The notes under the pieces are model-generated. The model made no database searches. It saw only the letters and a program-made list of their open reading frames with translations, and had not been told where the DNA came from. A stretch of 34,240 nucleotides of DNA from Macrostomum lignano (lineage: Eukaryota): the NCBI GenBank assembly GCA_002269645.1, contig NIVC01004818.1, positions 1 to 34,240 of the forward strand. The letters run 5' to 3'. The translations under genes were made by a program, and so were the position numbers. Shown here piece after piece: positions 105 to 32,734 of the stretch. Positions within the stretch are counted from its first letter, which is position 1. Each line of letters begins with the position of its first letter.

Positions 105-1607
105 TTACAACCCAGCGTTAATTGCGGTTCTAATTAACGAGACTATGATAAATATGAACCCGCCTGCAAGGAGCACCGGTACCAAGTACGCTCCCACGTT
201 AGTTGAAGCGGTTTGGTAGTTTCTGATCACAACTTCCACTCGTTTCTGCTCCATTTCTGCAGCGCTTAGAGTTGTTGAAATATTCTCTGCAGCCGGCGTT
301 ACGAATGTTGTCGGGTTTGTTGGTGTTGGGAATGTTGTCGTGTCAGCGGGTGTTGGGAATGTTGTCGGGTCTGGAGGTGTTGGAAATGTTGTCGGGTCTG
401 GAGGTGTTGGGAATGTTGTCGTGTCAGCGGGTGTTGGGAATGTTGTCGAGTCTGAAGGTGTTGGGAATGTTGTCGTGTCAGCGGGTGTTGGGAATGTTGT
501 CGAGTTTGAAGGTGTTGGGAATGTTGTCGGGTCTGGAGGTGTTGGGTATGTTGTCGGGTCTGGAGGTGTTGAGAATGTTGTCGGGTCTGGAGGTGTTGGG
601 AATGTTGTCGGGTCTGGAGGTGTTGGGAATGTTGTCGTGTCAGCGGGTGTTGGGAATGTTGTCGAGTCTGAAGGTGTTGGGAATGTTGTCGTGTCAGCGG
701 GTGTTGGGAATGTTGTCGAGTCTGAAGGTGTTGGGAATGTTGTCGGTCTGGAGGTGTTGGGTATGTTGGTCGTCTGGAGGTGTTGAGAATGTTGTCGGGG
801 TCTGGAGGTGTTGGGAATGTTGTCGGTCTGGAGTGTTGGGAATGTTGTCGTGTCAGCGGTGTTGGGAATGTTGTCGAGTCTGAAGGTGTTGGGAATGTTG
901 TCGTGTCAGCGGGTGTTGGGAATGTTGTCGAGTCTGAAGGTGTTGGGAATGTTGTCGGGTCTGAAGGTGTTGGGAATGTTGTCGGTCTGAAGGTGTTGGT
1001 ATGTTGTCGGTCTGGAGGTGTTGGTATGTTGTCGGGTCTGGAGGTGTTGGGAATGTTGTCGGGTCTGAAGGTGTTGGGTATGTTGTCGGGTCTGAAGGTG
1101 TTGGGTATGTTGTCGGGTCTGAAGGTGTTGGGAATGTTGTCGGGTCTGAAGGTGTTGGGTATGTTGTCGGGTCTGGAGGTGTTGGTATGTTGTCGGGTCT
1201 GGAGGTGTTGGTATGTTGTCGGGTCTGGAGTGTTGGGTATGTTGTCGGGTCTGGAGGTGTTGGGTATGTTGTCGGGTTGGAGGTGTTGGAATGTTGTCGG
1301 TCTGAAGGGTTGGGTATGTTGTCGTGTCAGCGGGTGTTGGGAATGTTGTCGGGTCTGGAGGTGTTCCCAGCACATCAGATGTAGTACTGTCAGAGAAGGA
1401 AACAGTAGTCCCTATCGACGTAGTCACAACCGTTGCCATGGTGACATTGTTCCCTGACGTGGGAGCAGCCGTAGAGCTAGCGTAACTAGCAGTGTCAGTA
1501 GACCACGTTGTGTCAGTCACAGGCGCAGTTTGTGCCACTCGGATTAGCAGAGCTACAACCGATATAGCTGTAGCCAGCAAGGCATGTTGCTGCCTATTAG
1601 AATGCAT
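105..1607 (-). CDS. Putative type I membrane mucin-like protein: signal peptide, Ser/Thr-rich region, about 39 x 9-aa TTFPTP(P/S/A)D(P/S/T) repeats, TM helix. Frame broken by indels inside the repeat.
   Basis: ATG at 1607 gives MHSNRQQHALLATAISVVALLIRVAQT-AP (signal-peptide-like), then an S/T-rich stretch running in frame into the repeat. Hand translation from ~745 to the TAA at 105-107 gives (TTFPTPxDx)n-TNPTTFVTPAAENISTTLSAAEMEQKRVEVVIRNYQTASTNVGAYLVPVLLAGGFIFIIVSLIRTAINAGL*. Confidence 0.7.
306..1365 (-). repeat. 27-bp tandem repeat (coding mucin repeat of the antisense gene)
   Basis: Unit gggtctggaggtgttgggaatgttgtc with variants gtgtcagcg / gagtctgaa and gaat/gtat. Units are intact from 306 to ~745; single-base deletions are frequent from ~745 to 1310. 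Confidence 0.95.
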
Positions 1608-1925
1608 TGTCAGTGTCAGACTATGACAGACAAGCCAGATATGACAAGTAGTATCTTAGTGTCTTTGTCTGACACTGCCTGTAGTATAATATAAAACTAT
1701 ATATATATATATTTAACGAGTTTGAATCTCTCCACCAACTATTGGTCTTGCGTCAACTAAAAGTTTTTCGTTTACACACCTGCCTACCGACCGTTTAACT
1801 TTTCCTTTAACCAGTTAGTTAGGCTAGAAGCCACTGCAAACAGGCAGACTTTTAAAGATCAAAGTAAATACAGCTACCAGTCAATTGTGAAGATTTATTC
1901 ATAGCAACTTAACACGCCTACCTAG

Positions 1926-2055
1926 GATACAAGCGTCGACGTCCAGGGCCTGGTGGAGAACTCTGAGTACAGTTTCCGCGTATTTGCCGTCAATGAGAAC
2001 GGAAGCAGCGAGCCGCTAGAGACAACGGGGCCCATTATGGCCAAAATGCCGTTCG
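1926..2055 (+). CDS. unc-22: Twitchin exon (end of an Fn3 domain); gene begins upstream of the window
   Basis: AG|DTSVDVQGLVENSEYSFRVFAVNENGSSEPLETTGPIMAKMPF-g|GT, a typical titin-family Fn3 C-terminus. Phase 1 matches the next exon. Confidence 0.9.
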
Positions 2056-2481: not shown

Positions 2482-4390
2482 ACAAGCCGCAGGCACCCGG
2501 CGAGCCGGAGGCCGAGGAGGTCGGCGCCGACTTCGTGTCGCTGAGCTGGAGTCGCCGGTGTCGGACGCGGCGGCAAGATCACCGGCTACTACGTGGAGAA
2601 GCGCGAGGCCGGAGCCAGCGACGCCGCCTGGACGCGGTGAACTTCGTGCCGATTCACAACACGACCTGCAACATCCCCAACCTCATCGAGGACAAAGACT
2701 ACGAGTTCCGCGTGTTCGCTGAGAACGAAGCCGGGCTGAGCCAGCCGTCTGGCGCGTCTCGCAAGGTGACAGTGAAGGACCCGAAGGCGCAGTCCCTGCC
2801 GCAGTTCACCACCCAGCTAAAGCGCCAGCAGGTCAACGAGGGCAAGCGGGCGGAGTTCGAGGTGCAGCTGAACGGCAGCCCGCCGTTCGACGTAGTCTGG
2901 TCCAAGGGCGTCCGCGAGCTCGCGCCCTCCGGCAAGTACGACATCGGAAAGGAGGGCGACCGCTACTACCTGGTGGTGAACAACTGCTCCATCGACGACG
3001 CCGACGAGTACAGCGTCCGCGTCAGCAACCGCGCCGGGTCGCGCGCCAGCCGGGCCGACCTGACCATCCGGTCGGAGCCGAAGATCCGCAAGCCGGCGAG
3101 ATTTGACGCGCCGACGGTCATGGACAAGTGCGACAACCTCACCATCAAGCTGCCGTTCACCGCATATCCGAAACCGAGCGCCGTCTGGAAGCTCAACGGA
3201 GTCGAGCTGAAGCCGGGTAGAAAGTTCGAAATCGAACAGAAGGAGCGCCACTGCATCCTCACCGTGAACGACCTCAGCCGCGAGGACTCGGGCGTCTACA
3301 GTCTGACATTGGAGAACGACATCGGCACCGCCTCGGCCAGCATCGAGGTAACCGTCAACGACCGGCCCGATCCGCCCAAGAGCCTCCGCACGGAGGCTGT
3401 CACCGACACCAACATTGTGCTGTCCTGGCAGCCGGCGCTGGACCCAGAGCAGAGCGGAGTGTACATCAGCGGTTACGACATCGAAAAGCGGGAGCTCCCA
3501 TCGGGCAGTTGGGTCCGCTGCGCCCAGTCCCGCTTCGCCCAGGCGTCGGTTGACAGTCTGCTGCGCGACAAAGACTACGAGTTCCGCGTGATCGCCGAGA
3601 ATCTCTACGGCCGCAGTGAACCGTCGCCGTCCGTCGGGCCCTACGCCTGGCCGAGCCGCGAGTCCAGGCCCGCCGGGCCGGCGACGTCCGCTCGGAGCTC
3701 GGCGGCAAACGCGGCCACGACGGGCCGAAGCCCAGCAACTACGACTCCTGCTACAGCAACCTGTGGGACAGGCACCGGCCCTACCCCGTCAGCATCAAGA
3801 CCGGCTCGGTGTACGACGACTACGAGATCCTAGAGGAGCTTGGCAGCGGCGCCTTCGTGTGGTGCACCGCTGCAAGGAGAAGGCCACCGGCCAGATATTC
3901 GTGGCGAAGTTCATCGACACGCCTTACTCGCTGGACAAGCAGACGTGCGCAACGAGGTGAGCATCATGAACGCACTGCACCATCCCAAACTCATTAACCT
4001 GCATGACGTCTACGACGACGTGAACGAGATGGTGCTCATCATGGAGTTTCTTTCTGGTGGCGAGCTGTTCGATCGCATCGCCGACGACTCGTACAAAATG
4101 TCCGAGGCGGAGGTGATCAAGTACATGCGCCAGGTGTGCGACGGGCTCAAGCACATGCACGAGCAGGGCATTGTGCACCTGGACATTAAGCCGGAGAATC
4201 TCATATGCGAGACGTCGAAGTCCACCAGCATCAAGGTCATCGACTTCGGCTTGGCCACCCGCCTGAATCCCAACGAGACGGTGAAGGTGACCACCGCGAC
4301 TGCCGAGTTCGCCGCACCAGAGATCGCCGACAATGACGGCGTCGGGTTCTACACGGACATGTGGGCGGTTGGAGTGCTGGCCTACGTGCT
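2482..4390 (+). CDS. unc-22: Twitchin exon: Fn3-Ig-Ig-Fn3, N-terminal linker and most of the kinase domain (several apparent 1-bp deletions)
   Basis: Starts (D)KPQAPGEP...VSLSW, then YEFRVFAENEAG, Ig domains, linker HDGPKPSNYDSCYSNLWDRHRPYPVSIKTGSVYDDY. Kinase motifs: ELGSGAF, VAKFI, HLDIKPEN, DFGLA, TTATAEFAAPE, DMWAVGVLAYVL. Donor gtgagt at 4391. Frame switches near 2556, 2568, 2636, 3640-3690, 3857 and 3945. Confidence 0.95.
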
Positions 4391-4410
4391 GTGAGTGTGC
4401 GGCCGGACCG

Positions 4411-5450
4411 GGACAATTGTTCCAATAGGCATTGTTCCAAAAGGCACTGCTCCAATAGGCATTGTTCCAAAAGGCACTGTTCCAATAGGCACTGTTCCAA
4501 TAGGCACTGTTCCAAAAGGCACTGTTCCAATAGGCACTGTTCCAATAGGCACTGTTCCAATAGGCACTGTTCCAATAGGCACTGCTCCAATAGACACTGT
4601 TCCAATAGGCACTGCTCCAATAGACACTGTTCCAATAGGCACTGCTCCAATAGGCACTGTTCCAATAGGCACTGTTCCAATAGGCACTGTTCCAATAGGC
4701 ACTGTTCCAATAGGCACTGTTCCAATAGGCACTGCTCCAATAGGCACTGCTCCAATAGACACACTCCAATAGACACACTCCAATAGACACACTCCAATAG
4801 ACACACTCCAATAGACACACTCCAATAGACACACTCCGATAGACACACTCCAATAGACACACTCCAATAGACAAACTCCAATAGACACACTCCAATAGAC
4901 ACACTCCAATAGACACACTCCAATAGACACACTCCGATAGACACACTCCAATAGACACACTCCAATAGACAAACTCCAATAGACACACTCCAATAGACAC
5001 ACTCCGATAGACACACTCCAATAGACACACTCCAATAAACACACTCCGATAGACACACTCCAATAGACACACTCCAATAGACACACTCCAATAGACACAC
5101 TCCAATAGACACACTCCAATAGACACACTCCAATAGACACACTCCAATAGACAAACTCCAATAGACACACTCCAATAGACAAACTCCAATAGACACACTC
5201 CAATAAACACACTCCGATAAACACACTCCAATAGACACACTCCAATAGACACACTCCGATAGACACACTCCGATAGACACACTCCGATAGACACACTCCA
5301 ATAGACACACTCCAATAGACACACTCCAATAGACACACTCCAATAGACACACTCCGATAGACACACTCCAATAGACACACTCCAATAGACACACTCCGAT
5401 AGACACACTCCAATAGACACACTCCGATAGACACACTCCAATAGACACAC
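4411..5450. repeat. Compound intronic minisatellite: 15-mer (ggcactgttccaata) changing to 14-mer (gacacactccaata)
   Basis: Read directly. Fills intron 4391-5470 except about 20 nt at each end. Confidence 0.97.
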
Positions 5451-5470
5451 TGCTGTCCTCTCCATTCCAG

Positions 5471-5746
5471 GCTAAGCGGTTTGTCGCCATTCGCTGGCAA
5501 TGACGACTACGAGACTCTTGGCAACGTGAAAAAGTGCGACTGGGACTTCGATCGGGACGCTTTCGCCAGCGTGTCAGACGAGGCGCGGGACTTCATTAAG
5601 AGCCTGCTAGTCAGACGGCCAGAAAAACGGCTGACTGTGCACGAGGCCCTGGACCATCCGTGGCTGCAGCGGGCCGCCGAAGGTCTGGACAAGAGGATTC
5701 CGCCAGCCGCTACGATAAACTACGGCAGAAGATGCAAGATCTGCAT
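5471..5746 (+). CDS. unc-22: Twitchin exon: kinase C-lobe and start of the autoregulatory tail
   Basis: ccag|(L)LSGLSPFAGNDDYETLGNVKKCDWDFDRDAF...LTVHEALDHPWL...RIP(x)SRYDKLRQKMQDLH|gtaag, with one 1-bp deletion near 5703. Confidence 0.93.
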
Positions 5747-5873
5747 GTAAGCACTTGGAATTAACCGATTAGGAGATGTAGATTAAGAACATAATCTCAA
5801 AAAATACTCGCCAATCTCAGTATCTTCTACTCAAAATAAGTAGACTATCGCTGAATTTCAACTTTTTTTGCAG

Positions 5874-5976
5874 CCTAATTGGTTTGGCGGCAATCTGGGC
5901 ATTGCTCGACTGGCCGACTTTAGCTCGTTGCGAAAGCTGAGAATGAAAGAGTTCCAGATGCACGAGACCAGCTTTG
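5874..5976 (+). CDS. unc-22: Twitchin exon: C-terminal regulatory domain (not in ORF track)
   Basis: ttttgcag|PNWFGGNLGIARLADFSSLRKLRMKEFQMHETSF-g|gtgagt, resembling the twitchin tail motif (IGRIANFSSLRK). Phases 0/1 fit the neighbouring exons. Confidence 0.88.
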
Positions 5977-6026
5977 GTGAGTACCAGGGCAAAACCACTC
6001 TTTATGACAGTAGGAGAAGCTAATCA

Positions 6027-6769
6027 TCTCTATGACCAGTGGGAAGCGAATCTCTATGACCAGTGGGAAGCGAATCTCTATGACCAGTGGGAAGCGAATC
6101 TCTATGACCAGTGGGAAGCGAATCTCTATGACCAGTGGGAAGCGAATCTCTATGACCAGTGGGAAGCAAATCTCTATGACCAGTGGGAAGCCACTCTTTG
6201 TGACCGTATGGGAAGCCACTAGTCTGTATATGACTGTTAGGGAAGCCACTAGTCTCTATATGACTGTTAGGGAAGCCACTAGTCTCTATATGACTGTTAG
6301 GGAAGCCACTAGTCTCTATATGACTGTTAGGGAAGCCACTAGTCTCTATATGACTGTTAGGGAAGCCACTAGTCTCTATATGACTGTTAGGGAAGCCACT
6401 AGTCTCTATATGACTGTTAGGGAAGCCACTAGTCTCTATATGACTGTTAGGGAAGCCACTAGTCTCTATATGACTGTTAGGGAAGCCACTAGTCTCTATA
6501 TGACTGTTAGGGAAGCCACTAGTCTCTATATGACTGTTAGGGAAGCCACTAGTCTCTATATGACTGTTAGGGAAGCCACTAGTCTCTATATGACTGTTAG
6601 GGAAGCCACTAGTCTCTATATGACTGTTAGGGAAGCCACTAGTCTCTATATGACTGTTAGGGAAGCCACTAGTCTCTATATGACTGTTAGGGAAGCCACT
6701 AGTCTCTATATGACTGTTAGGGAAGCCACTAGTCTCTATATGACTGTTAGGGAAGCCACTAGTCTCTAC
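6027..6769. repeat. Compound intronic minisatellite: 24-mer (ctctatgaccagtgggaagcgaat) followed by a related 30-mer (ggaagccactagtctctatatgactgttag)
   Basis: Read directly, within intron 5977-6819. Confidence 0.97.
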
Positions 6770-6819
6770 ATGTATATGACGCAGCCATCCAAACTGATAA
6801 ATGCCATCAAAATCCCCAG

Positions 6820-7052
6820 ACCGTCGCGAGGCCGTGCCCCGTTTCGTGCTGCGCTCAAAGAACGCCTACTGCCTGGAGGGCCAGAACGCCGTATTCGAGT
6901 GCAAGGTGCTGTCAATCTCGCCACCCATTGTCACCTGGGCTAGGAACGACGAGGCACTGATGCAGTCGGTGAAGTACATGCAGCGCTACGCCGGACACGA
7001 CTTCTCGCTAAAGATCAACCGTGTCAAGCCGGAGGACGGAGGGGATTATCAG
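6820..7052 (+). CDS. unc-22: Twitchin exon: first post-kinase Ig domain
   Basis: cccag|(D)RREAVPRFVLRSKNAYCLEGQNAVFECKV...W...SLKINRVKPEDGGDYQ|gt. Confidence 0.92.
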
Positions 7053-7193
7053 GTGACTTGATGGCATTGTTTTGATGGCGGTAATTCATTTTAGGGTTTT
7101 TAGGTATCAAAGTAAGTTACTGATGAACTCTCAACGTTGTTCATTTTTATGTCACATTTTAGACTGGTGAGTTTGACATTTTTCGGCATCGAA

Positions 7194-7490
7194 CTCTGGA
7201 CATTTAGGAAATTATAGATAGCCCACTCTGAAGATTTAGGAAATCATTGATAGCCCACTCTGGACATTTAGGAAATCATAGATAGCCAACTCTGGACATT
7301 TAGGAAATCATAGATAGCCAACTCTGGACATTTAGGAAATCATAGATAGCCAACTCTGGACATTTAGGAAATCATAGATAGCCCACTCTGGACATTTAGG
7401 AAATCATAGATAGCCCCCCTCTGGACATTTAGGAAATCATAGATAGCCCCCCTCTGGACATTTAGGAAATCATAGATAGCCAACTCTGGA
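7194..7490. repeat. 32-bp intronic minisatellite (ctctggacatttaggaaatcatagatagccaa)
   Basis: About 9 copies in intron 7053-7518. Confidence 0.95.
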
Positions 7491-7518
7491 CAAAGATAGC
7501 CTCGCAATCCCACGCCAG

Positions 7519-7830
7519 GTGAAAGCGGAGAACTCCTTCGGCCGCAAGGAGGCCACCATCAAGTTGCACGTGGAGCCGATGGCCCCCAAGGACAACCTGG
7601 AGCCGGCCGAGAGGACGCCAAGACCCCGGAAGTCGCCGTCGCCGCTGCCCGAGCTGTGGAAGGAGCCGGACAGGCCGGCCAAGGTCACCTTCCCGCTGCG
7701 GAATCGCTTCATTCAGGAGGGCGGCTTTGTCAAGCTCAGCTGCACCTTTGACGGCCTGCCGCCGCCGGAGGTGTTCTGGACAAAGGACGGTCGCGAGCTG
7801 CAGCCGCGGGGCAAGGATTACAACCTGCAG
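7519..7830 (+). CDS. unc-22: Twitchin exon: end of one Ig domain, Pro-rich linker, start of the next Ig domain
   Basis: ccag|VKAENSFGRKEATIKLHV...FPLRNRFIQEGGFVKLSCTFDGLPPPEVFWTKDG...YNLQ|gtgcgt. Confidence 0.92.
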
Positions 7831-7982
7831 GTGCGTCTGCGGGAGAGAGAATACAGTCTATCAACTGTTGGGACTTTAGTAGCTGCGTGTTGCTGTTCTG
7901 GTACTTTCAGCTGCTAGCTCTATACAAAGTCCTTTATCCCAGCCTGTGATCCCATTGTTAATCCCAGTCTATGGTCCCGAGT

Positions 7983-8817
7983 TTAACCCTGAGCTGAACT
8001 CTGAGCTGAACCCTGAGCTGAACCCTGAGCTGAACCCTGAGCTGAACCCTGAGCTGAACCCTGAGCTGAACCCTGAGCTGAACCCTGAGCTGAACTCTGA
8101 GCTGAACCCTGAGCTGAACCCTGAGCTGAACCCTGAGCTGAACCCTGAGCTGAACCCTGAGCTGAACCCTGAGCTGAACCCTGAGCTGAACCCTGAGCTG
8201 AACCCTGAGCTGAACCCTGAGCTGAACCCTGAGCTGAACCCTGAGCTGAACCCTGAGCTGAACCCTGAGCTGAACCCTGAGCTGAACCCTGAGCTGAACC
8301 CTGAGCTGAACCCTGAGCTGAACCCTGAGCTGAACCCTGAGCTGAACCCTGAGCTGAACCCTGAGCTGAACCCTGAGCTGAACCCTGAGCTGAACCCTGA
8401 GCTGAACCCTGAGCTGAACCCTGAGCTGAACCCTGAGCTGAACCCTGAGCTGAACCCTGAGCTGAACCCTGAGCTGAACCCTGAGCTGAACCCTGAGCTG
8501 AACCCTGAGCTGAACCCTGAGCTGAACCCTGAGCTGAACCCTGAGCTGAACCCTGAGCTGAACCCTGAGCTGAACCCTGAGCTGAACCCTGAGCTGAACC
8601 CTGAGCTGAACCCTGAGCTGAACCCTGAGCTGAACCCTGAGCTGAACCCTGAGCTGAACCCTGAGCTGAACCCTGAGCTGAACCCTGAGCTGAACCCTGA
8701 GCTGAACCCTGAGCTGAACCCTGAGCTGAACCCTGAGCTGAACCCTGAGCTGAACCCTGAGCTGAACCCTGAGCTGAACCCTGAGCTGAACCCTGAGCTG
8801 AACCCTGAGCTGAACTC
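7983..8817. repeat. Near-perfect 12-bp intronic tandem repeat (ctgagctgaacc), about 69 copies
   Basis: Read directly. Ends about 15 nt before the acceptor at 8831-8832. Confidence 0.98.
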
Positions 8818-8832
8818 CGCCCTCTCCCGCAG

Positions 8833-9705
8833 GTTGTCAGCGGCGTGGCCAGCCTGGAGATTTTCTCCGCCAGCACGCAGGACTCCGGCCGCTATTCGGT
8901 CCGGGTGAAGAACGCCAAAGGCGAGGACGAGACCCAGTGCAAGCTGGACGTCTGCGAGAGTCGCGTCAAGTCGGCTGGCTCAGGCGGCAGCGGCGTCCGC
9001 TTCAAAGAGTCAATGAGCGTCGACCGGCTCAGCGAGACCTACTCGCGATCGCAGCGCAGCGGCGCAGGTGGCGGTTCCTCCACCATCGTCGAGGAGAAGT
9101 ACAGTCTGGAGTTCGAGTCCACATCGACCAGTTCAACGTCGCGCACGGAGATGCGCTCATCGACTAGCGCCACCTCCGTGAGCCGCGCGTCGGAGCGGAG
9201 CTCCCGGCAGAAACAGACGGAGATATCCACGTCATCAGCGTCCGAGGCCCCCAAAGCGGCCCCTGAGGTCACAAAGAAGCTGCCAGCAGCCCTGACAGCC
9301 AAGGAGGGCGACCGGGTCGAGCTGAGCTGCACCTTCAACGCCGCTGCCGATGACATCGGCATCGCCTGGGACCTGGACGGCAAGCCGGCGCAGGCCGAGG
9401 AGGGCGCTCTCGAGATCCGCACGTCGGGCACCTCGTCAAGCCTCCTGCTGCCCGACGCTCTGGTGGAGGACTCCGGCCTGTACACCTGCACCTGCTCGGC
9501 AAGCGGCGCCTCCGCCAAGACCTCCTGCCGTCTGACTGTTGAAGCGCCGAAGGCGCAGGCGGCCCAGGTGAAAATCGACGCGCATCCGCGGTCGCTGTCG
9601 GTCAAAGACGGCGAGCCGTTCGAGCTGGCGCTTAAAGCGTCCGGCGGGGTGACGGCCGTGCGGTGGACGGCGAACGGAAAACCGGTGTCGGCCGATTTTG
9701 AGCAG
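8833..9705 (+). CDS. unc-22: Twitchin exon: Ig end, Ser-rich linker, one Ig domain, start of the next Ig domain
   Basis: gcag|VVSGVASLEIF...DSGRYSVRVKNAKGEDET..., then VELSCTF...W...DSGLYTC, ending DFEQ|gtgag. 873 nt, phase 0/0. Confidence 0.9.
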
Positions 9706-9729
9706 GTGAGACTGGCTGCTTGAATGACT

Positions 9730-10250
9730 TTTATCTGACACAAACTATGACCCCCATCTGACACAATAGTGACTCCTATCTGACGCCAACTATGACCTCC
9801 ATCTGACACTAATAGTGACTCCTATCTGACGCAAACTATGACCCTCATCTGACACTAATAGTGACTCCTATCTGACGCCAACTATGACCGTCATCTGACA
9901 CTAATAGTGACTCCTATCTGACACAAACAATGACCTCCATCTGACACTAATAGTGACTCCTATCTGACACTAACTATGACCTCCATCTGACACTAATAGT
10001 GACTCCTATCTGACACTAACTATGACCCCATCTGACACTAACTATGACCCCATCTGACACTAATACTGACTCCTATCTGACACTAACTATGACCCCATCT
10101 GACACTAATAGTGACTCCTGTCTGACATCAACTATAACCCCATCTGACACTAATAGTGACTCCTATCTGACACTAACTATGACCCCATCTGACACTAATA
10201 GTGACTCCTGTCTGACATCAACTATAACCCCATCTGACACTAATAGTATC
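9730..10250. repeat. 45-bp intronic minisatellite built from two related ~22-23-bp halves
   Basis: Unit tgactcctatctgacactaactatgaccccatctgacactaatag, with degenerate copies to ~10385. Confidence 0.93.
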
Positions 10251-10796: not shown

Positions 10797-12993
10797 TATC
10801 ACTCTGGGGACACAGCTCTATTTCAATTATCACACTGTGGACACAGCTCTATTTCAACTATCACACTGTGGACACAGCTCTATTTCAATTATCACACTGT
10901 GGACACAGCTCTATTTCAACTATCACACTGTGGACACAGCTCTATTTCAACTATCACACTGTGGACACAGCTCTATTTCAACTATCACACTGTGGACACA
11001 GCTCTATTTCAACTATCACACTGTGGACACAGCTCTATTTCAACTATCACACTGTGGACACAGCTCTATTTCAACTATCACACTGTGGACACAGCTCTAT
11101 TTCAATTATCACACTGTGGACACAGCTCTATTTCAATTATCACACTGTGGACACAGCTCTATTTCAATTATCACACTGTGGACACAGCTCTATTTCAACT
11201 ATCACACTGTGGACACAGCTCTATTTCAACTATCACACTGTGGACACAGCTCTATTTCAACTATCACACTGTGGACACAGCTCTATTTCAACTATCACAC
11301 TGTGGACACAGCTCTATTTCAACTATCACACTGTGGACACAGCTCTATTTCAACTATCACACTGTGGACACAGCTCTATTTCAATTATCACACTGTGGAC
11401 ACAGCTCTATTTCAATTATCACACTGTGGACACAGCTCTATTTCAACTATCACACTGTGGACACAGCTCTATTTCAACTATCACACTGTGGACACAGCTC
11501 TATTTCAACTATCACACTGTGGACACAGCTCTATTTCAACTATCACACTGTGGACACAGCTCTATTTCAACTATCACACTGTGGACACAGCTCTATTTCA
11601 ATTATCACACTGTGGACACAGCTCTATTTCAACTATCACACTGTGGACACAGCTCTATTTCAATTATCACACTGTGGACACAGCTCTATTTCAACTATCA
11701 CACTGTGGACACAGCTCTATTTCAATTATCACACTGTGGACACAGCTCTATTTCAACTATCACACTGTGGACACAGCTCTATTTCAATTATCACACTGTG
11801 GACACAGCTCTATTTCAATTATCACACTGTGGACACAGCTCTATTTCAATTATCACACTGTGGACACAGCTCTATTTCAATTATCACACTGTGGACACAG
11901 CTCTATTTCAATTATCACACTGTGGACACAGCTCTATTTCAATTATCACACTGTGGACACAGCTCTATTTCAACTATCACACTGTGGACACAGCTCTATT
12001 TCAACTATCACACTGTGGACACAGCTCTATTTCAACTATCACACTGTGGACACAGCTCTATTTCAATTATCACACTGTGGACACAGCTCTATTTCAACTA
12101 TCACACTGTGGACACAGCTCTATTTCAATTATCACACTGTGGACACAGCTCTATTTCAATTATCACACTGTGGACACAGCTCTATTTCAATTATCACACT
12201 GTGGACACAGCTCTATTTCAACTATCACACTGTGGACACAGCTCTATTTCAACTATCACACTGTGGACACAGCTCTATTTCAACTATCACACTGTGGACA
12301 CAGCTCTATTTCAATTATCACACTGTGGACACAGCTCTATTTCAATTATCACACTGTGGACACAGCTCTATTTCAATTATCACACTGTGGACACAGCTCT
12401 ATTTCAATTATCACACTGTGGACACAGCTCTATTTCAATTATCACACTGTGGACACAGCTCTATTTCAATTATCACACTGTGGACACAGCTCTATTTCAA
12501 CTATCACACTGTGGACACAGCTCTATTTCAATTATCACACTGTGGACACAGCTCTATTTCAACTATCACACTGTGGACACAGCTCTATTTCAATTATCAC
12601 ACTGTGGACACAGCTCTATTTCAACTATCACACTGTGGACACAGCTCTATTTCAATTATCACACTGTGGACACAGCTCTATTTCAATTATCACACTGTGG
12701 ACACAGCTCTATTTCAATTATCACACTGTGGACACAGCTCTATTTCAACTATCACACTGTGGACACAGCTCTATTTCAATTATCACACTGTGGACACAGC
12801 TCTATTTCAATTATCACACTGTGGACACAGCTCTATTTCAACTATCACACTGTGGACACAGCTCTATTTCAATTATCACACTGTGGACACAGCTCTATTT
12901 CAACTATCACACTGTGGACACAGCTCTATTTCAACTATCACACTGTGGACACAGCTCTATTTCAATTATCACACTGTGGACACAGCTCTATTT
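10797..12993. repeat. 31-bp intronic minisatellite (acactgtggacacagctctatttcaaYtatc), about 70 copies
   Basis: Read directly. Essentially the only variable position is C/T. Lies in intron 10709-13017. Confidence 0.98.
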
Positions 12994-13017
12994 AAAAAAT
13001 TTCCCTATCAAATGCAG

Positions 13018-13208
13018 CCACTTGGACAAAGGAGAACGGAACTGCAACTGGCCAGCTATCAAACGATGGCGACCGCTTGAGGCTGGTGTCAGCAGACTGC
13101 GACCACTCCTTGAACATCGCCGCGGCCGCCGCGACCGACTCCGGGCTCTACAGGATCGACCTGACTGGCCCGGACGGTGCCAAAGAGACCGCCTGCTTCT
13201 CGTTGCAG
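13018..13208 (+). CDS. unc-22: Twitchin exon: last Ig domain (not shown in the correct frame in the ORF track)
   Basis: atgcag|(A)TWTKENG...HSLNIAAAAATDSGLYRIDLTGPDGAKETACFSLQ|gtaaaa. Ig W and DSGxY motifs are present, and phase 1 matches the previous exon. Confidence 0.85.
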
Positions 13209-13282
13209 GTAAAAAGTTTGCCACTTTAATCCCGTTTGTTTCCGCTGCATAGGGTGGGAATATAATTTGACCCAGTTTAGTT

Positions 13283-13752
13283 CCTCTAGACCATGTGCTG
13301 GAACCTCTAGATCCGGTGCTGGAACCTCTAGACCCTGTGCTGGAACCTCTAGATCCGGTGCTGGAACCTCTAGACCCTGTGCTGGAACCTCTAGATCCGG
13401 TGCTGGAACCTCTAGACCCTGTGCTGGAACCTCTAGATCCGGTGCTGGAACCTCTATAGACCCAGAAATGGAACCTCTAGACCCGGTGCTGGAACCTCTA
13501 GACCCAGAAATGGAACCTCTAGACCCGATGCTGGAACCTCTAGACCCGGAAATGGAACCTCTAGACCCAGAAATGGAACCTCTAGACCCGGTGCTGGAAC
13601 CTCTAGACCCTGTGCTGGAACCTCTAGATCCGGTGCTGGAACCTCTAGACCCGGTATTGGAACCTCTAGACCCGGTACTGGAACCTCTAGATCCGGTGCT
13701 GGAACCTCTAGACCCGGTATTGGAACCTCTAGACCCGGTACTGGAACCTCTC
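13283..13752. repeat. 21-bp intronic minisatellite (ctggaacctctagacccggtg)
   Basis: About 22 copies between donor 13209 and a candidate acceptor at 13781-13782. Confidence 0.96.
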
Positions 13753-18344: not shown

Positions 18345-18734
18345 GTGACCAACTTTGTAGTTTCGGCCGTGACGGCACTCTGCTTCAACTGCCTGCTAGG
18401 CGGCGTCGCCGTCGCCCTGTCGATGCGTTCGCACAGCCTGCTGGCCCGCGGCGATCGACGCGACGCCGAAGGCCAACCGTCGAGAGCGGCCGCTGATAGG
18501 CGACGCGCTGTGGCCTACGGCCGCGTGGCCGCAGTGTGCAGCTGCCTGGGAGTGCTCAGCACCATGCTGGGCCTCATCTGGCTGTTCAGCCAGCCAAACG
18601 TGGCCAGACTGGCCGCCTACTTGGCCAGCATCGATCTCGGCGGGCAGCGAGCTGCGGCCGGGTCGGGGGTTGGGGCCGGCCGAGACGGCGGCGCAGTTCG
18701 GGGCAGCCTGGAGAGATTCGCCAGGCAGGACTGA
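18345..18734 (+). CDS. Probable CD225/dispanin (IFITM/PRRT-like) membrane protein; 5' end not found
   Basis: VTNFVVSAVTALCFNCLLGGVAVALS...LARGD...AE...AVAYGRVAAVCSCLGVLSTMLGLIWLF: two hydrophobic segments with Cys near the first and a GD motif in the loop, as in CD225 domains. The frame is open back to a TAA at 18075 with no ATG. Confidence 0.6.
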   Translation: MTNFVVSAVTALCFNCLLGGVAVALSMRSHSLLARGDRRDAEGQPSRAAADRRRAVAYGRVAAVCSCLGVLSTMLGLIWLFSQPNVARLAAYLASIDLGGQRAAAGSGVGAGRDGGAVRGSLERFARQD

Positions 18735-20820: not shown

Positions 20821-21540
20821 CTGACTGCCTGCCTGACTGCCTGCCTGACTGACTGACTGACTGACTGACTAAATGACTGACTGACTGCCTGACTGACTGA
20901 CTGACTGACTGACTGACTGACTGCCTGACTGACTAACTGCCTGACTGACTGACTGGCTGACTGACTGGCTGACCGACTGCCTGACTGACTGACTGGCTGA
21001 CTGACTAACTGACTGACTAACTGCCTGACTAACTGCCTGACTGACTGACTGGCTGACTGACTGGCTGACTGACTGACTGGCTGACTGACTGCCTGACTGA
21101 CTAACTGCCTGACTGACTGCCTGACTGACTGACTGGCTGACTGACTGACTGACTGACTGGCTGACTGACTGGCTGACTGGCTGACTGACTGGCTGACTGA
21201 CTAACTGACTGACTAACTGCCTGACTAACTGCCTGACTGACTGACTGGCTGACTGACTGGCTGACTGACTGACTGGCTGACTGACTGCCTGACTGACTAA
21301 CTGCCTGACTGACTGACTGACTGACTGACTGACTAACTGACTGACTGACTGCCTGACTGACTAACTGCCTGACTGACTGACTGGCTGACTGACTGACTGA
21401 CTGACTGGCTGACTGACTGACTGACTGACCAACTAACTAACTGACTGACTAACTAACTAACTGACTGACTGACTGACTGACTGACTGACTGATTAACTAA
21501 CTAAATAACTAACTAACCTACTAACAAGTAAACTAACTAA
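20821..21540. repeat. (GACT)n-type microsatellite with GCCT/GGCT/AACT variants
   Basis: Read directly. Drifts to (AACT)n at the 3' end. Confidence 0.97.
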
Positions 21541-23509: not shown

Positions 23510-23887
23510 CTACACTAATTCGTCGCTGCAGTAATCACTCGACCGTCTTGGCGGCCGGGCTTTGGCCAGCGCCCTGGCCCGGCTGAGCTCCTCCTCAGAT
23601 GCCGACTGAATAAGGAAGGTCCGATTGAACGAGCGCCACCGTCTGCACAAGCCGAAGTAGGTGCGGCACTGCACGTACATGAATACTGTGCCGCCGGTGA
23701 AGCCGATGGCTACAACTACCAGCTTAGTCCAGAACGGCCACTCCAGCTTGCCCGAGTTGATCTCGGCGCTGGTCTTCTCTATTAGCACGTATAGGGACCA
23801 GATCACGCAGGTGAGCGCGATGATGTGAAATGAGACGCTGCAGATTATCTTGCGCCGCTCTAGTGAGCTAATGTCCAGCTTTCGCCA
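23510..23887 (-). CDS. MARCH8: MARCH1/8-type E3 ligase, last exon (two TM helices)
   Basis: ccgcag|[36 protein letters not shown]...[27 protein letters not shown]...*, closely matching the conserved MARCH1/8 TM region. Cannot distinguish MARCH1 from MARCH8. Confidence 0.93.
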
Positions 23888-23984
23888 CTGCGGAATTGGA
23901 GAGTTTCATCCTATTAGTACTCTAGTTTTATTGAGAAAATGAGCTGGGATTAGTGAACTGGGAGTCAGGGATGAAGCTGGTTGG

Positions 23985-24445
23985 CTGTCAGGGTCGGATA
24001 GGGATGGATTCTGATTGGCTTTCAGGGTCGGTTAGGGATGGATTCTGATTGGCTGGCAGGGTTGGATAGGGATGGATTCTGATTGGCTGACAGGGTCGGA
24101 TAGGGATGGATTCTGATTGTCTGGCAGGGTCGGATAGGGATGAATTCTGATTGGCTGAAGGGTCGGATTGGGACGAAGCTGATTGGCTGTCAGGGTCGGA
24201 TAGGGACGAAGCTGATTGGTTGTCAGGGTCGGGTCGGATAGGGACGAAGCTGATTGGTTGTCAGGGTCGGGTCGGATAGGGACGAAGCTCATTGGCTGAC
24301 AGGTCGGATAGGGACTAATCTTATTGGCTGACAGGATCGGATAGAGATGGATTCTGATTGGCTGATAGGGTCGAACAGGGGTAGGTTCTGATTGGCTAAC
24401 AGGGTTGGATAGGGGTAGATTCTGATTGGCTGACAGGGTCGGATA
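23985..24445. repeat. ~34-bp minisatellite in the MARCH intron (gggtcggatagggatggattctgattggctgaca)
   Basis: Read directly. Fills most of intron 23888-24496. Confidence 0.93.
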
Positions 24446-24496
24446 AAAATATGTTAATTGACAGGTACGTAGGAAGGGTTAAGACATATTTCTCAC

Positions 24497-24837
24497 CTCG
24501 CTAATCGGCTTAGTAGTGACCCGCATAACAAAGCCAAATTTGCACAATTCACAAACTTTAATATCCTGCGATTTAACCCAGTGCTGCAGGCAGTCTCTGT
24601 GCACGTATTTTAAAGAGCCGGAGCACAGACAGGGCGATATAAGCGGATTATCGCCGGCCGGATCAGTGTCCGGACAGTGACAGATTCGGCAGATGTCAGC
24701 CTGAGAGTCGGCGGTATCTGGTGAGACACCGGCAGACACCGGCAACTGATGCTGATAGTGCTGAAGATGCAGCGGCTGCGGAAGGGTTGGAACGGGTGAT
24801 ACAAACTGTGCCATCAGCAATTTTTCAGTCGAGCTGG
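24497..24837 (-). CDS. MARCH8: MARCH1/8-type E3 ligase, RING-CH exon
   Basis: DICRICHC...NPLISPCLCSGSLKYVHRDCLQHWVK...CELCK (C4HC3). Donor gag|gtgaga at 24497/24496. Candidate acceptor at 24839-24838; in-frame ATG at 24814. Confidence 0.93.
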
Positions 24838-25029
24838 CTGACGGGAAAACATGTCGCACAGGGATACTGACAATATAGTAATAATAATAATTGATCACAC
24901 CTGACCCAATTGAGCCAGATGTGCAACCGACAGCTCAGCCGCAGCATTCGCGCGGCGCATCTGAAGGCTGCGTACGGCTGTTCAGTCCATGGACTGGGGG
25001 GTCGCCACACACCCTCAATTACCCCAGCT

Positions 25030-31339: not shown

Positions 31340-32185
31340 TCATGTTAACAAACGCATGAAGACAATTGAAAATGCGGAAAAAAAGTACTTGCAATTCAGC
31401 TGACAGCGCATCGTTGCGCAACAGTCGACGCACCAGTTGCCATTGTCGTAGTAGGCCTCGATCAGTTGGAACAGGCCGCTATCTGTGCACAGCTGGTCTA
31501 ATTCGCCTTCAACAAACAAGTGATAGAAGCGCAATCGTTCGTCTGATCGCTGCGCCAAGGCACCAGCATGTCGGCAGATTTGAATTCGGAGCCGGGCCGA
31601 TGAACGCCCAGACCCGTGCGGGCATCGCGAACCAACTGTTCCCCTCTCTGTCCGGCATCGTCAGACTCCTCTGGCTTCTTTAAGTAGGCCGATGCTTTGC
31701 CATTGCGCCGCTGCTCCATAGCCCACACGTAGATTAGAATCGGCGCGTTAGGCCTGCTGACGCGGGCCAGCTCCTTAATAGCGGCTAACCGGCGCTCCCT
31801 AGTACTCAAATGATGCAATACGGCAATGCACACGGCCGCATCGAATACGGCATTGCGCAATGGTAATTGCAAAGCGTCGGCTTGGAATACCGGCAGGCTG
31901 CGGCTAGCGCACACGGTGCACAGCGCCACGCTGCGATCGCAGCCAATAGCTAGCAGATCCCGCCTAGCCAACATGTTCTTGCCGTTGCCGCAGCCGATGT
32001 CTAAAAGCAGACAGCCTGGCGGCAGGTCCGCTAGAAAAGCGGCCACGCGGGGCCAGCGCGAGTGCCGGGTGTCGCTGAAATGATCGGCGATGGAGTCGTA
32101 CACTGAGTGTACGAACTCGCGCTCAAGGCTGGCTGGATCTAGAGCCTGCTGTTGCTGAGTTGGCTGGCTCTCGGCGGGGCTGAGG
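31340..32185 (-). CDS. ALKBH8: ALKBH8 last exon: Trm9-type SAM-dependent tRNA wobble-uridine methyltransferase domain (frameshifted near 31545; exact stop uncertain, 31340 or 31396)
   Basis: LEREFVHSVYDSIADHFSDTRH, DIGCGNGK, GCDRS, IAVLHH, IYVWAMEQ, DMLVPW, then in another frame RFYHLFVEGEL...YYDNGNWCV. Acceptor ttccag| at 32187-32186 in phase 2. Confidence 0.9.
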
Positions 32186-32734
32186 CTGGAATTGCAGGTA
32201 CGAGTCATGGCTTAGTCGTAATGGAATCTCGAAATCAAGATTGAAATGGATCAGAGAGCATCAACGTCAATGTGGACATTAATAATTTTTTTAGCATGGC
32301 TATATCATCAGCCTTGAGGTTTGCTCATTATTGAATTTTGATCTGCGACATCCAAGAAATTCAAAAACAGGTGTCCATAGTCACCTGGTGCCAACATATT
32401 GAAGGTCCAGAAGCTCTGTCTGGTTGAAGGCGGGTGAGTAACGAAGTCAGAGCTGATGCAGACACATGGTCAAAGTGCTGATGAAATTTGGAGACTTGGC
32501 AAGGCTGCACTGAGGCGCAGTGCTGATTGGCGTACAGAGGCTGTATTGAATACACTGGCGCTTATGGGAAAATCCAAACTTCCCTTCCAGCAGAATTGTT
32601 GAATATTTATCTAGGCGGTCCGAAAAGCTGGTGACTTGATGGCAGTTTGCAGTTTTAGGGGGCCCCCTACTTTGGTAGTTCTGCGGGCGGAGAAATGGCT
32701 TTGCATTCCTACTGTGTAGAAAATCCGCGAAAGG

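What the first reader, a model, noticed from the sequence alone, without database searches (positions are those of the whole stretch)
105..1607. Hidden antisense membrane-mucin gene nested in a twitchin intron
This looks like one more minisatellite, but it is bracketed by non-repetitive coding sequence in the right frames. The 5' side has a signal peptide and an S/T-rich segment entering the repeat in frame. The 3' side, after about 15 intact units, has a unique juxtamembrane segment, a hydrophobic helix (VGAYLVPVLLAGGFIFIIVSLI) and a 8-aa tail ending in TAA. The unit is 27 nt (a multiple of 3), and variants behave like protein substitutions: F<->Y, and PDP/SDS/ADT with Asp kept. The first twitchin exon here (1926) starts mid-Fn3, so this gene sits in a twitchin intron on the opposite strand. 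I recognise no family, so it could be a lineage-specific O-glycosylated surface or glycocalyx protein. The ORF track misses the C-terminal half.
Basis: partly seen in the sequence, partly recalled or inferred. Interest (0 to 1): 0.75.

Follow-up and report, generated by a model that had tools for sequence, protein, structure and literature searches.

The report
Orphan membrane mucin gene inside twitchin intron
A 27-base repeat in an intron of the muscle gene twitchin is very probably the core of a small, previously unrecognised opposite-strand gene for a membrane-anchored, sugar-coated (mucin-like) surface protein, and its apparent frameshifts look like sequencing errors; this is a plausible but fairly ordinary kind of lineage-specific gene.

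Summary
On the minus strand, 1607->105 (1503 nt) runs from ATG through a signal-peptide-like segment and a unique S/T-rich stretch. It then enters a 27-nt array (40 units, consensus PTP[PSA]D[PST]TT[F/Y]), followed by a unique stalk, a 22-aa hydrophobic helix, an 8-aa tail and TAA.

Both unique flanks lie in the same frame as the PT reading of the repeat. Shuffled flanks give this combination with probability about 4e-7. None of the other 16 arrays in the window shows it.

The 12 off-length units (743-1321) differ from intact variants by 17 deletions (15 in C-runs), 2 insertions and 0 substitutions. Neighbouring twitchin exons carry at least six frame breaks; the five located are the same G-run deletion on the + strand. 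One lies in a kinase domain 74% identical to Aplysia twitchin. The frameshifts are therefore most likely assembly errors.

Against an old gene: no homologue in any database searched, although those databases hold few animal sequences, and GC3 is 0.45 versus 0.85 in twitchin. Transcription and glycosylation were not testable.

Best reading: a real, lineage-specific, single-exon nested gene for a type I membrane mucin-like protein of about 505 aa (confidence about 0.65). Modest interest.

The parts
1697..1713 (-). TATA-like (TA)n tract, about 95 nt upstream of the ATG. Possible core promoter (inferred only).
   Evidence: Read from the sequence. There is no ATG between it and 1607. A (TA)n microsatellite could equally be there by chance.
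1611..1677 (-). 18-nt inverted repeat (1611-1628 / 1660-1677) in the putative 5' leader. An in-frame stop lies at 1658-1656, 16 codons before the ATG.
   Evidence: The stop shows that the ORF cannot extend further upstream in this exon.
1527..1607 (-). Start codon (1607-1605, A at -3) and signal-peptide-like segment MHSNRQQHALLATAISVVALLIRVAQT. It has a basic n-region and a 14-aa h-region. A at -3 and T at -1 fit cleavage before APV.
   Evidence: Kyte-Doolittle 12-residue mean 2.72. The cleavage site was judged by the (-3,-1) rule from my own knowledge; SignalP was not available.
1362..1526 (-). Unique S/T-rich mature N-terminal segment (47% Ser+Thr, one NVT sequon). It enters the repeat in frame.
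   Evidence: 0 of 20,000 shuffles reach 47% S+T; no similarity to the repeat unit.
303..1365 (-). 27-nt tandem array of 40 units that encode PTP[P/S/A]D[P/S/T]TT[F/Y]. There is a partial 54-nt higher-order alternation (SDS/ADT). The intact block is 74% P+T+S.
743..1321 (-). Zone with 12 off-length units: 17 deletions (15 in C-runs), 2 insertions, 0 substitutions, net -15 nt. It creates the apparent frameshifts and the stop at 908-906. Most likely assembly error.
   Evidence: The same lesion (G-run contraction on the + strand) occurs in twitchin exons.
198..302 (-). Unique juxtamembrane stalk VTPAAENISTTLSAAEMEQKRVEVVIRNYQTASTN, with one NIS sequon.
132..197 (-). Hydrophobic helix VGAYLVPVLLAGGFIFIIVSLI (22 aa). 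Predicted transmembrane anchor.
   Evidence: Kyte-Doolittle 19-residue mean 2.56.
105..131 (-). 8-aa tail RTAINAGL (Arg directly after the helix) and TAA stop (107-105).
1926..2050 (+). Host-gene exon: second half of a twitchin Fn3 domain after a ...cctacctAG acceptor. The 3' end of the exon is approximate.
   Evidence: fn3 model positions 49-83 of 84.

Best explanation
Proposal: a genuine, single-exon, protein-coding gene lies on the minus strand inside an intron of a twitchin-type gene. In the real genome it is probably an uninterrupted ORF of about 505 codons.

Domain order: signal peptide (about 27 aa), a unique S/T-rich segment of about 55 aa, 40 nonapeptide repeats PTP[P/S/A]D[P/S/T]TT[F/Y], a 35-aa stalk, one transmembrane helix and an 8-aa cytoplasmic tail.

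Inferred mechanism:
1. The signal peptide takes the protein into the ER.
2. The 3-4 Thr/Ser per repeat, about 150 sites next to prolines, are O-glycosylated in the Golgi.
3. This turns the ectodomain into an extended, negatively charged rod with one Asp per repeat.
4. The helix tethers the rod to the cell surface. The tail is too short for signalling.

The protein would therefore act passively, as a glycocalyx, barrier, lubricating or anti-adhesive component.

Shown: the ORF architecture, its statistical improbability, its position, and the error-like nature of the frameshifts. Inferred: transcription, signal cleavage, topology, glycosylation and function.
For: Frame and architecture:
- The N- and C-terminal unique flanks are open only in the frame that reads the repeat as PT-rich. 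The other minus-strand frames hold many stops in the flanks.
- Hydropathy peaks are 2.72 (N-terminal h-region) and 2.56 (C-terminal helix).
- The joint chance probability is about 3.7e-7 per frame.
- This is the only one of 102 array-by-frame combinations in the window with both flank features.
- Ser+Thr is 47% in the unique N-terminal segment against 21 +/- 5% in shuffles, and only in this frame.
- The flanks are unrelated to the repeat unit.
- An in-frame stop lies 16 codons upstream. There is no upstream ATG in the last 110 nt, A sits at -3, and a TATA-like tract lies about 95 nt upstream.

Frameshifts as artefacts:
- The 12 off-length units equal known intact variants apart from 17 deletions (15 of C in C-runs), 2 insertions and 0 substitutions.
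- Twitchin exons 2540-2640 and 3640-3950 each pass through frames 0->2->1->0, which makes six 1-nt deletions. The five that could be located are G-run contractions on the + strand.
- Once stitched, the kinase domain aligns without gaps to Aplysia twitchin kinase 1KOB: E = 1.5e-114, 74% identity.

Mucin criteria: P+T+S is 74% and T+S is 44% in the repeats, which meets the PTS-repeat criteria in PMC9417175.

Nesting is common: intronic genes make up about 6% of Drosophila genes and most encode proteins (PMC3786989 abstract).
Against: - No homologue was found. Word-indexed phmmer over 5.8 billion proteins gave no hit at E<=10. Full phmmer of the C-terminal 75 aa over 1.84 billion representatives gave no hit. 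Metagenome scans gave nothing. Pfam gave nothing. These collections barely cover animals: the best hit for twitchin itself was 43% identical. The negative result is therefore weak.
- GC3 is 0.45-0.48 in the flanks and 0.36 in the repeats. Twitchin is at 0.73-0.88, the CD225-like ORF at 0.78, the methyltransferase at 0.68 and the RINGv exon at 0.53. Local non-coding GC is 0.32-0.46.
- Variation between units gives no sign of purifying selection.
- As assembled, the ORF is broken.
- Other arrays with GGG/CCC runs (7985-8815, 6210-6772, 13283-13751) show 0% indels. The errors are therefore patchy, and the cause of the patchiness is unknown.
- No canonical AATAAA lies in the 104 nt available downstream; only GATAAA and AATAAG occur.
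- No expression data could be consulted.
Confidence: 0.65

Rival explanations
1. Proto-gene or non-functional ORF. This is one more intronic minisatellite whose stop-free unit happens to sit between two open flanks. It is untranscribed, or transcribed only as noise, and no functional protein is made.
For: - The window holds 17 arrays in 34 kb, 8 of them with a period divisible by 3. Many give ORFs of hundreds of codons that are clearly meaningless.
- GC3 is like non-coding DNA.
- There is no homologue anywhere.
- Variation between units is mostly non-synonymous.
- At about 4e-7 per frame, a genome with 1e5-1e6 arrays could hold a chance case or two. That extrapolation is my own.
Against: - Three independent frame-specific signals coincide: a signal-like start directly after the first ATG, 47% Ser+Thr in unique sequence (0 of 20,000 shuffles), and a TM-grade helix followed by Arg and a stop.
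- Of 102 controls in the window, only this one has both flank features.
- GC of the flanks (0.47-0.50) is above the adjacent intron at 0.37.
Confidence: 0.2
2. Decayed gene. It was once a membrane mucin gene, but the indels at 743-1321 are real. The locus now encodes at most a truncated 233-aa secreted product.
For: - The assembly as given has 19 indels and an in-frame stop at 908-906.
- Several other arrays with G/C triplets show no indels, so the assembler does not always corrupt such runs.
- The low GC3 could reflect relaxed constraint.
Against: - Zero substitutions accompany the 19 indels. The deletion-to-insertion ratio is 17:2, and 15 of the 17 deletions sit in C-runs. That is the profile of long-read consensus error (PMC9262707 abstract), not of natural decay.
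- The same lesion breaks the twitchin kinase domain, which is otherwise 74% identical to Aplysia's over 223 aa without gaps.
- Both unique flanks and 17 consecutive units remain perfectly open.
Confidence: 0.08
3. Same gene, different anchoring. The C-terminal hydrophobic stretch is a GPI-attachment signal rather than a transmembrane helix, which would give a GPI-anchored mucin. A further option is that the N-terminal segment is an uncleaved signal anchor.
For: Only 8 residues follow the hydrophobic stretch. Small residues (N, S, T, A) lie 6-12 residues upstream in NYQTASTN and could serve as the attachment site. The judgement rests on my knowledge of GPI signals.
Against: The stretch is 22 residues long with a very high hydropathy of 2.56. 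It is followed by Arg and a hydrophilic tail, which fits the positive-inside rule for a type I helix. GPI signals usually end with the hydrophobic stretch itself.
Confidence: 0.07

Closest known systems
Small type I membrane sialomucins of vertebrates (podoplanin, glycophorin A, CD164/endolyn, endomucin)
   Same: Same architecture: signal peptide, S/T/P-rich O-glycosylation ectodomain, one TM helix and a very short cytoplasmic tail. Podoplanin also has a tail of about 9 aa (from my own knowledge).
   Different: No sequence relationship: Pfam returned no family for either half of the protein. The ectodomain here is a near-perfect 40-fold nonapeptide array with a fixed Asp and Phe/Tyr in each unit. 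Those vertebrate proteins lack such an array.
Orphan, lineage-specific mucins that arise by gain of PTS repeats (Pajic et al. 2022, PMC9417175)
   Same: This is a functionally defined class, not a homology-defined one. It has exonic tandem PTS repeats between short unique termini, a signal peptide and no orthology to other mucins.
   Different: Those cases are secreted mammalian proteins derived from proline-rich precursors in the SCPP locus. This one is membrane-anchored, from an invertebrate, nested in an intron, and has no identifiable precursor.
Schistosoma mansoni polymorphic mucins (SmPoMuc, PMC2576457)
   Same: A signal peptide followed by a variable-number array of 9-aa repeats encoded by 27-bp units, in a lophotrochozoan, restricted to its lineage.
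   Different: In SmPoMuc each 27-bp unit is a separate exon inside a genomic repeat of about 1 kb, the gene has 15 exons, and the word 'transmembrane' does not occur in the paper's main text. Here the units are contiguous in one exon and a TM helix follows. No sequence similarity was found.
Transmembrane mucins of the MUC1 / MUC3-12-17 / MUC4 types
   Same: A PTS tandem-repeat ectodomain tethered by a single TM helix.
   Different: Those carry SEA or NIDO-AMOP-vWD and EGF modules next to the membrane, and signalling tails (from my own knowledge). No such domain is present here, and the tail is only 8 aa.
Nested intronic genes on the opposite strand (for example Drosophila 2mit in timeless2, PMC3786989)
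   Same: A complete protein-coding unit inside an intron of a larger host gene, in the opposite orientation.
   Different: The upstream host exon lies outside the window, so nesting is inferred from the mid-domain start of the exon at 1926.

Membership tests
Mucin (functional class; criteria as in PMC9417175) | Tandem repeats contained within a coding domain | tested here: met
   40 units of 27 nt lie in frame with both unique flanks. This assumes that the 12 off-length units are assembly errors.
Mucin (functional class; criteria as in PMC9417175) | PTS-rich domain with T+S above 20% | tested here: met
   The intact repeat block is 74% P+T+S and 44% T+S. The unique N-terminal segment is 47% T+S.
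Mucin (functional class; criteria as in PMC9417175) | More than 4% predicted O-glycosylation sites, and actual dense O-glycosylation | not testable with these tools
   NetOGlyc is not available and there are no biochemical data. Thr next to Pro in every unit makes it plausible (inference).
Mucin (functional class; criteria as in PMC9417175) | Entry into the secretory pathway (signal peptide) | tested here: inconclusive
   The hydropathy and the n/h/c layout fit, and A at -3 with T at -1 would allow cleavage. No trained predictor was available.
SEA/EGF-type transmembrane mucins (MUC1, MUC3/12/17, MUC4, MUC13, MUC16) | SEA or NIDO-AMOP-vWD module and EGF-like domains next to the membrane | tested here: not met
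   A Pfam scan of the C-terminal 213 aa found no family at E<=1.
Podoplanin / glycophorin / CD164 / endomucin families | Sequence membership in the corresponding Pfam families | tested here: not met
   No Pfam hit above noise for either half. The best was DUF4656 at 17.4 bits against a cut-off of 27.
SmPoMuc family | 27-bp repeat exons inside genomic repeats of about 1 kb, and a conserved C-terminal region spread over many small exons | tested here: not met
   The units here are contiguous with no intervening introns. No protein similarity was found.
Nested (intronic, antisense) gene | The whole transcription unit lies between two exons of a host gene, on the opposite strand | tested here: inconclusive
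   The downstream host exon at 1926 begins at fn3 model position 49, and no Fn3 first half was seen in the parts of 1-1925 that were examined. The upstream exon and the 3' end of the nested transcript lie outside the window.
Twitchin (host gene) | Fn3/Ig array with a twitchin-type autoinhibited Ser/Thr kinase | tested here: met
   I-set, fn3 and Pkinase domains are present. The kinase is closest to Aplysia twitchin 1KOB at E = 1.5e-114 and 74% identity, and to C. elegans twitchin 1KOA at 59%.
GPI-anchored mucins | C-terminal GPI signal: attachment site, spacer, then a terminal hydrophobic stretch | not testable with these tools
   No GPI predictor was available. The 8-aa hydrophilic tail after the helix argues weakly against it.

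The most novel reading that the evidence does not exclude
The gene was born de novo from intronic DNA. One of the many minisatellites in these introns has a unit that reads as PTPPDPTTF. It expanded between two stretches that happened to supply, or then evolved, a signal peptide and a membrane anchor. [quoted passage not shown] In favour: GC3 like non-coding DNA, no homologue at all, a single-exon structure, and a minisatellite-rich setting.
Probability: 0.15. Interest if true: 0.6.

Novelty: new member of a known kind. Interest (0 to 1): 0.3.

Why it matters
If real, this is a gene that automated annotation would miss for three reasons. It lies inside an intron, it is masked as a minisatellite, and assembly errors have split its ORF.

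The case shows that homopolymer deletions in long-read assemblies can hide repeat-encoded surface proteins. It also shows that the same errors damage conserved genes such as twitchin in this assembly, which matters to anyone using its gene models.

Biologically it would add an invertebrate, membrane-tethered example to the orphan mucins that arise repeatedly and independently. Its regular Asp and Phe/Tyr in each unit is uncommon for mucins. It might also offer a tractable case of gene birth from a minisatellite. None of this changes current understanding, because orphan mucin-like genes and nested genes are both common.

Tried and rejected
- Exact-sequence look-ups of the 233-aa ORF and of the neighbouring methyltransferase ORF found no record, so the source genome could not be traced.
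- Homology searches with the unique N- and C-termini found nothing. Pfam found nothing. These negatives are weak, because twitchin itself found nothing closer than 43% identity.
- A metagenome scan by back-translated peptide patterns and one with an exact 24-mer from the TM region found nothing. No independent copy of the locus could be used to check the indels.
- Rfam over the whole window gave no RNA family.
- tblastn of the flanks against the window gave no paralogue.
- I considered treating the total length being a multiple of 3 (net -15 nt) as evidence, and rejected it. The chance is 1 in 3 whether the indels are errors or real.
- I considered '27 is a multiple of 3' and the open frame through the array as evidence, and rejected both. 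Eight of the 17 arrays have such periods, and arrays with periods of 31 and 43 nt are also open for hundreds of codons.
- I considered using variation between units as evidence of protein-level selection, and rejected it. Minor-allele counts are 35, 8 and 20 at codon positions 1, 2 and 3.
- A + strand reading of the array was rejected: it has stops and no Met-led flank.
- The idea that the flanks are decayed repeat units was rejected.
- Structure prediction was not run. The ectodomain is expected to be disordered, so a model would add nothing.
Full report
**1. What is in the sequence**

The minus strand from 1607 to 105 is 1503 nt long. One reading frame contains the following elements, in order:
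- an ATG at 1607 with A at -3;
- a signal-peptide-like segment, MHSNRQQHALLATAISVVALLIRVAQT;
- a unique 55-residue segment rich in Ser and Thr;
- the 27-nt tandem array;
- a unique 35-residue stalk;
- the hydrophobic stretch VGAYLVPVLLAGGFIFIIVSLI;
- the tail RTAINAGL and a TAA stop at 107-105.

An in-frame stop lies 16 codons upstream of the ATG. No other ATG occurs in the 110 nt before it.

Tandem Repeats Finder places the array at 303-1365, with 39.9 copies and 88% matches. Anchoring on CAACAT splits it into 40 units, of which 28 are exactly 27 nt. They encode PTP[P/S/A]D[P/S/T]TT[F/Y]. Seven main variants occur, with a partial 54-nt alternation of the SDS and ADT units.

**2. Is it more than chance?**

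Openness inside the array proves nothing. Seventeen arrays lie in this 34-kb window, 8 with periods divisible by 3, and arrays of 31 or 43 nt are open for hundreds of codons. The evidence lies in the flanks.

- *Shuffled flanks.* With first-order Markov versions of the flanks, a Met-led 5' ORF of at least 60 codons with a hydrophobic start occurred in 4.9e-4 of 200,000 trials. A 3' flank of at least 50 codons with a TM-grade window occurred in 7.6e-4. No trial had both, and the product is 3.7e-7.
- *Observed values.* The 5' flank is 80 codons with a hydropathy of 2.72. The 3' flank is 65 codons with a hydropathy of 2.56.
- *Control within the window.* Of the 102 combinations of array and frame, only this one has both flank features.
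- *Composition.* The unique mature N-terminal segment is 47% Ser+Thr in this frame. The other two frames give 13% and 2%. Shuffles give 21 +/- 5%, and none of 20,000 reached 47%.
- *Independence.* The flanks show no similarity to the repeat unit, so their open frames are not a legacy of the repeat.

**3. The frameshifts**

Twelve units between 1321 and 743 are 25, 26 or 28 nt long. Each was aligned to the nearest intact variant. Together they differ by 17 deletions (15 of a C within a C-run), 2 insertions and no substitutions, a net loss of 15 nt. Natural decay would bring substitutions with it, so this is an error-like signature.

The host gene gives an independent control.
- The twitchin exon at 2540-2640 passes through frames 0, 2, 1 and back to 0.
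- The exon at 3640-3950 does the same.
- That makes six single-base deletions. The five that could be located are contractions of G-runs on the + strand, which is the same lesion as C-run contraction on the minus strand.
- Two of them fall at GAF|GVVHRC and DKQT|VRNE, inside the kinase domain.
- Once stitched, 223 residues align without gaps to Aplysia twitchin kinase (1KOB) at E = 1.5e-114 and 74% identity. The alignment to C. elegans twitchin reaches back into the linker before the kinase.

A gene this well conserved is not a pseudogene, so the assembly carries patchy homopolymer deletions. Such errors are a known weakness of unpolished nanopore data (PMC9262707 abstract).

The array indels are therefore most likely artefacts. 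The true ORF would be about 505 codons.

Two caveats apply. The errors are patchy: units 742-310 and several other arrays with G or C triplets are clean, and I cannot say why. The net -15 nt is not evidence either way.

**4. Location**

The + strand exon begins at 1926 after ...cctacctAG. It matches positions 49-83 of the 84-position fn3 model. No first half of an Fn3 domain was seen in the parts of 1-1925 that were examined. The preceding twitchin exon must therefore lie left of the window, which puts the candidate inside an intron in antisense orientation.

Downstream on the + strand come Ig, Fn3 and kinase exons.

**5. What speaks against a well-established gene**

- No relative was found by word-indexed phmmer over 5.8 billion proteins, by exhaustive phmmer over 1.84 billion representatives, by Pfam or in metagenome contigs. 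These collections hold few animal sequences; twitchin itself found nothing above 43% identity. The negative result is weak.
- GC3 is 0.45-0.48 in the flanks and 0.36 in the repeats. Twitchin is at 0.73-0.88, the CD225-like ORF at 0.78, the methyltransferase at 0.68 and the RINGv exon at 0.53. Local non-coding GC is 0.32-0.46. This fits a young or weakly expressed gene, or a non-functional ORF.
- Variation between units is mainly at first codon positions. The second-position C is invariant at the two variable codons, which keeps those residues within P/S/A/T. That observation is suggestive only.
- Only 104 nt are available downstream, and they hold no canonical poly(A) signal.

**6. Mechanism proposed**

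1. The signal peptide directs the protein into the ER. Cleavage is probably after AQT (inferred from the -3,-1 rule).
2. The ectodomain is about 440 residues. Its repeat block is 74% P+T+S, which meets the composition criteria for a mucin PTS domain (PMC9417175).
3. It would be densely O-glycosylated and extended, with one Asp and one aromatic residue every nine residues.
4. The 22-residue helix, followed by Arg, anchors it as a type I protein.
5. The 8-residue tail offers no room for signalling.

A passive role at the cell surface follows: glycocalyx, barrier, lubrication or anti-adhesion. Every step after the ORF architecture is inference.

**7. Comparison with known systems**

In architecture it resembles the small vertebrate sialomucins such as podoplanin, glycophorin, CD164 and endomucin. 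It also resembles the orphan, lineage-specific mucins described by Pajic et al..

It shares the 27-nt, 9-aa unit and the signal peptide with the Schistosoma SmPoMuc proteins. In those, each unit is a separate exon in a genomic repeat of about 1 kb, and the word 'transmembrane' does not occur in the paper's main text.

It has none of the SEA, EGF or vWD modules of the classical transmembrane mucins.

It therefore belongs to the functional class of mucin-like membrane glycoproteins, not to any homology family. Nested antisense genes are also common (PMC3786989).

**8. Verdict**

| Reading | Confidence |
|---|---|
| Real, probably intact, lineage-specific nested gene for a membrane mucin-like protein | about 0.65 |
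| Non-functional ORF or proto-gene | about 0.2 |
| Truly frameshifted pseudogene | about 0.08 |
| Same gene with a GPI anchor or signal anchor instead | about 0.07 |

The finding is a new member of a known kind, of modest interest. The most novel reading not excluded is de novo birth from an intronic minisatellite (probability about 0.15).

Noticed in passing
window 2540-2640 and 3640-3950 (+): Twitchin coding exons carry at least six single-base deletions. Five were located and are G-run contractions: near 2548, 2567, 2637, 3857 and 3945. One more lies unplaced within 3640-3680. Two of them break the frame in the kinase N-lobe. Gene models from this assembly will be fragmented unless it is polished.
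   Followed up: yes
window 4418-33649: The density of minisatellites is very high: 17 arrays in 34 kb, with periods from 4 to 46 nt and up to 71 copies. Most lie in twitchin introns. They produce spurious ORFs of up to 794 aa, for example 10868-13252 across a 31-nt array.
   Followed up: partly
window 9725-10243 and 23977-24445: These two arrays contain C5 or GGG runs and show 3-9% indels by Tandem Repeats Finder. Arrays at 7985-8815, 6210-6772 and 13283-13751 also contain triplet runs but show 0%. Indel errors are patchy and the reason is unknown.
   Followed up: no
window 18345-18734 (+): A GC-rich ORF (GC3 0.78) has a weak CD225/IFITM-type match: E = 2.4e-5, 24.8 bits against a cut-off of 27.1. 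It may be a separate small membrane-protein gene downstream of twitchin.
   Followed up: no
window 24479-24898 (-) and 23510-23806 (-): A RING-variant (RINGv, MARCH-type E3 ligase) exon matches at E = 2.3e-15. A nearby minus-strand ORF has hydrophobic segments and may be the membrane-spanning exon of the same gene.
   Followed up: no
window 31498-32208 (-): A 236-aa ORF holds a class I SAM-dependent methyltransferase domain (Methyltransf_11, E = 1.9e-13). It is apparently a single exon.
   Followed up: no
window 20821-21492: A (CTGA)n microsatellite of about 168 copies grades into (ACTA)n repeats up to 21543.
   Followed up: no
window 1611-1677 (-): An 18-nt inverted repeat (89% complementary, 31-nt loop) lies directly upstream of the candidate's ATG, in its putative 5' leader. 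It could form a hairpin, or it could be there by chance.
   Followed up: no
window 2700-9723 compared with 105-1607: Third-position GC differs strongly between genes in one window: twitchin 0.73-0.88, the RINGv exon 0.53, the candidate 0.36-0.48. Exons of the conserved genes stand out as GC-rich islands (0.57-0.69) in introns at 0.32-0.46.
   Followed up: partly
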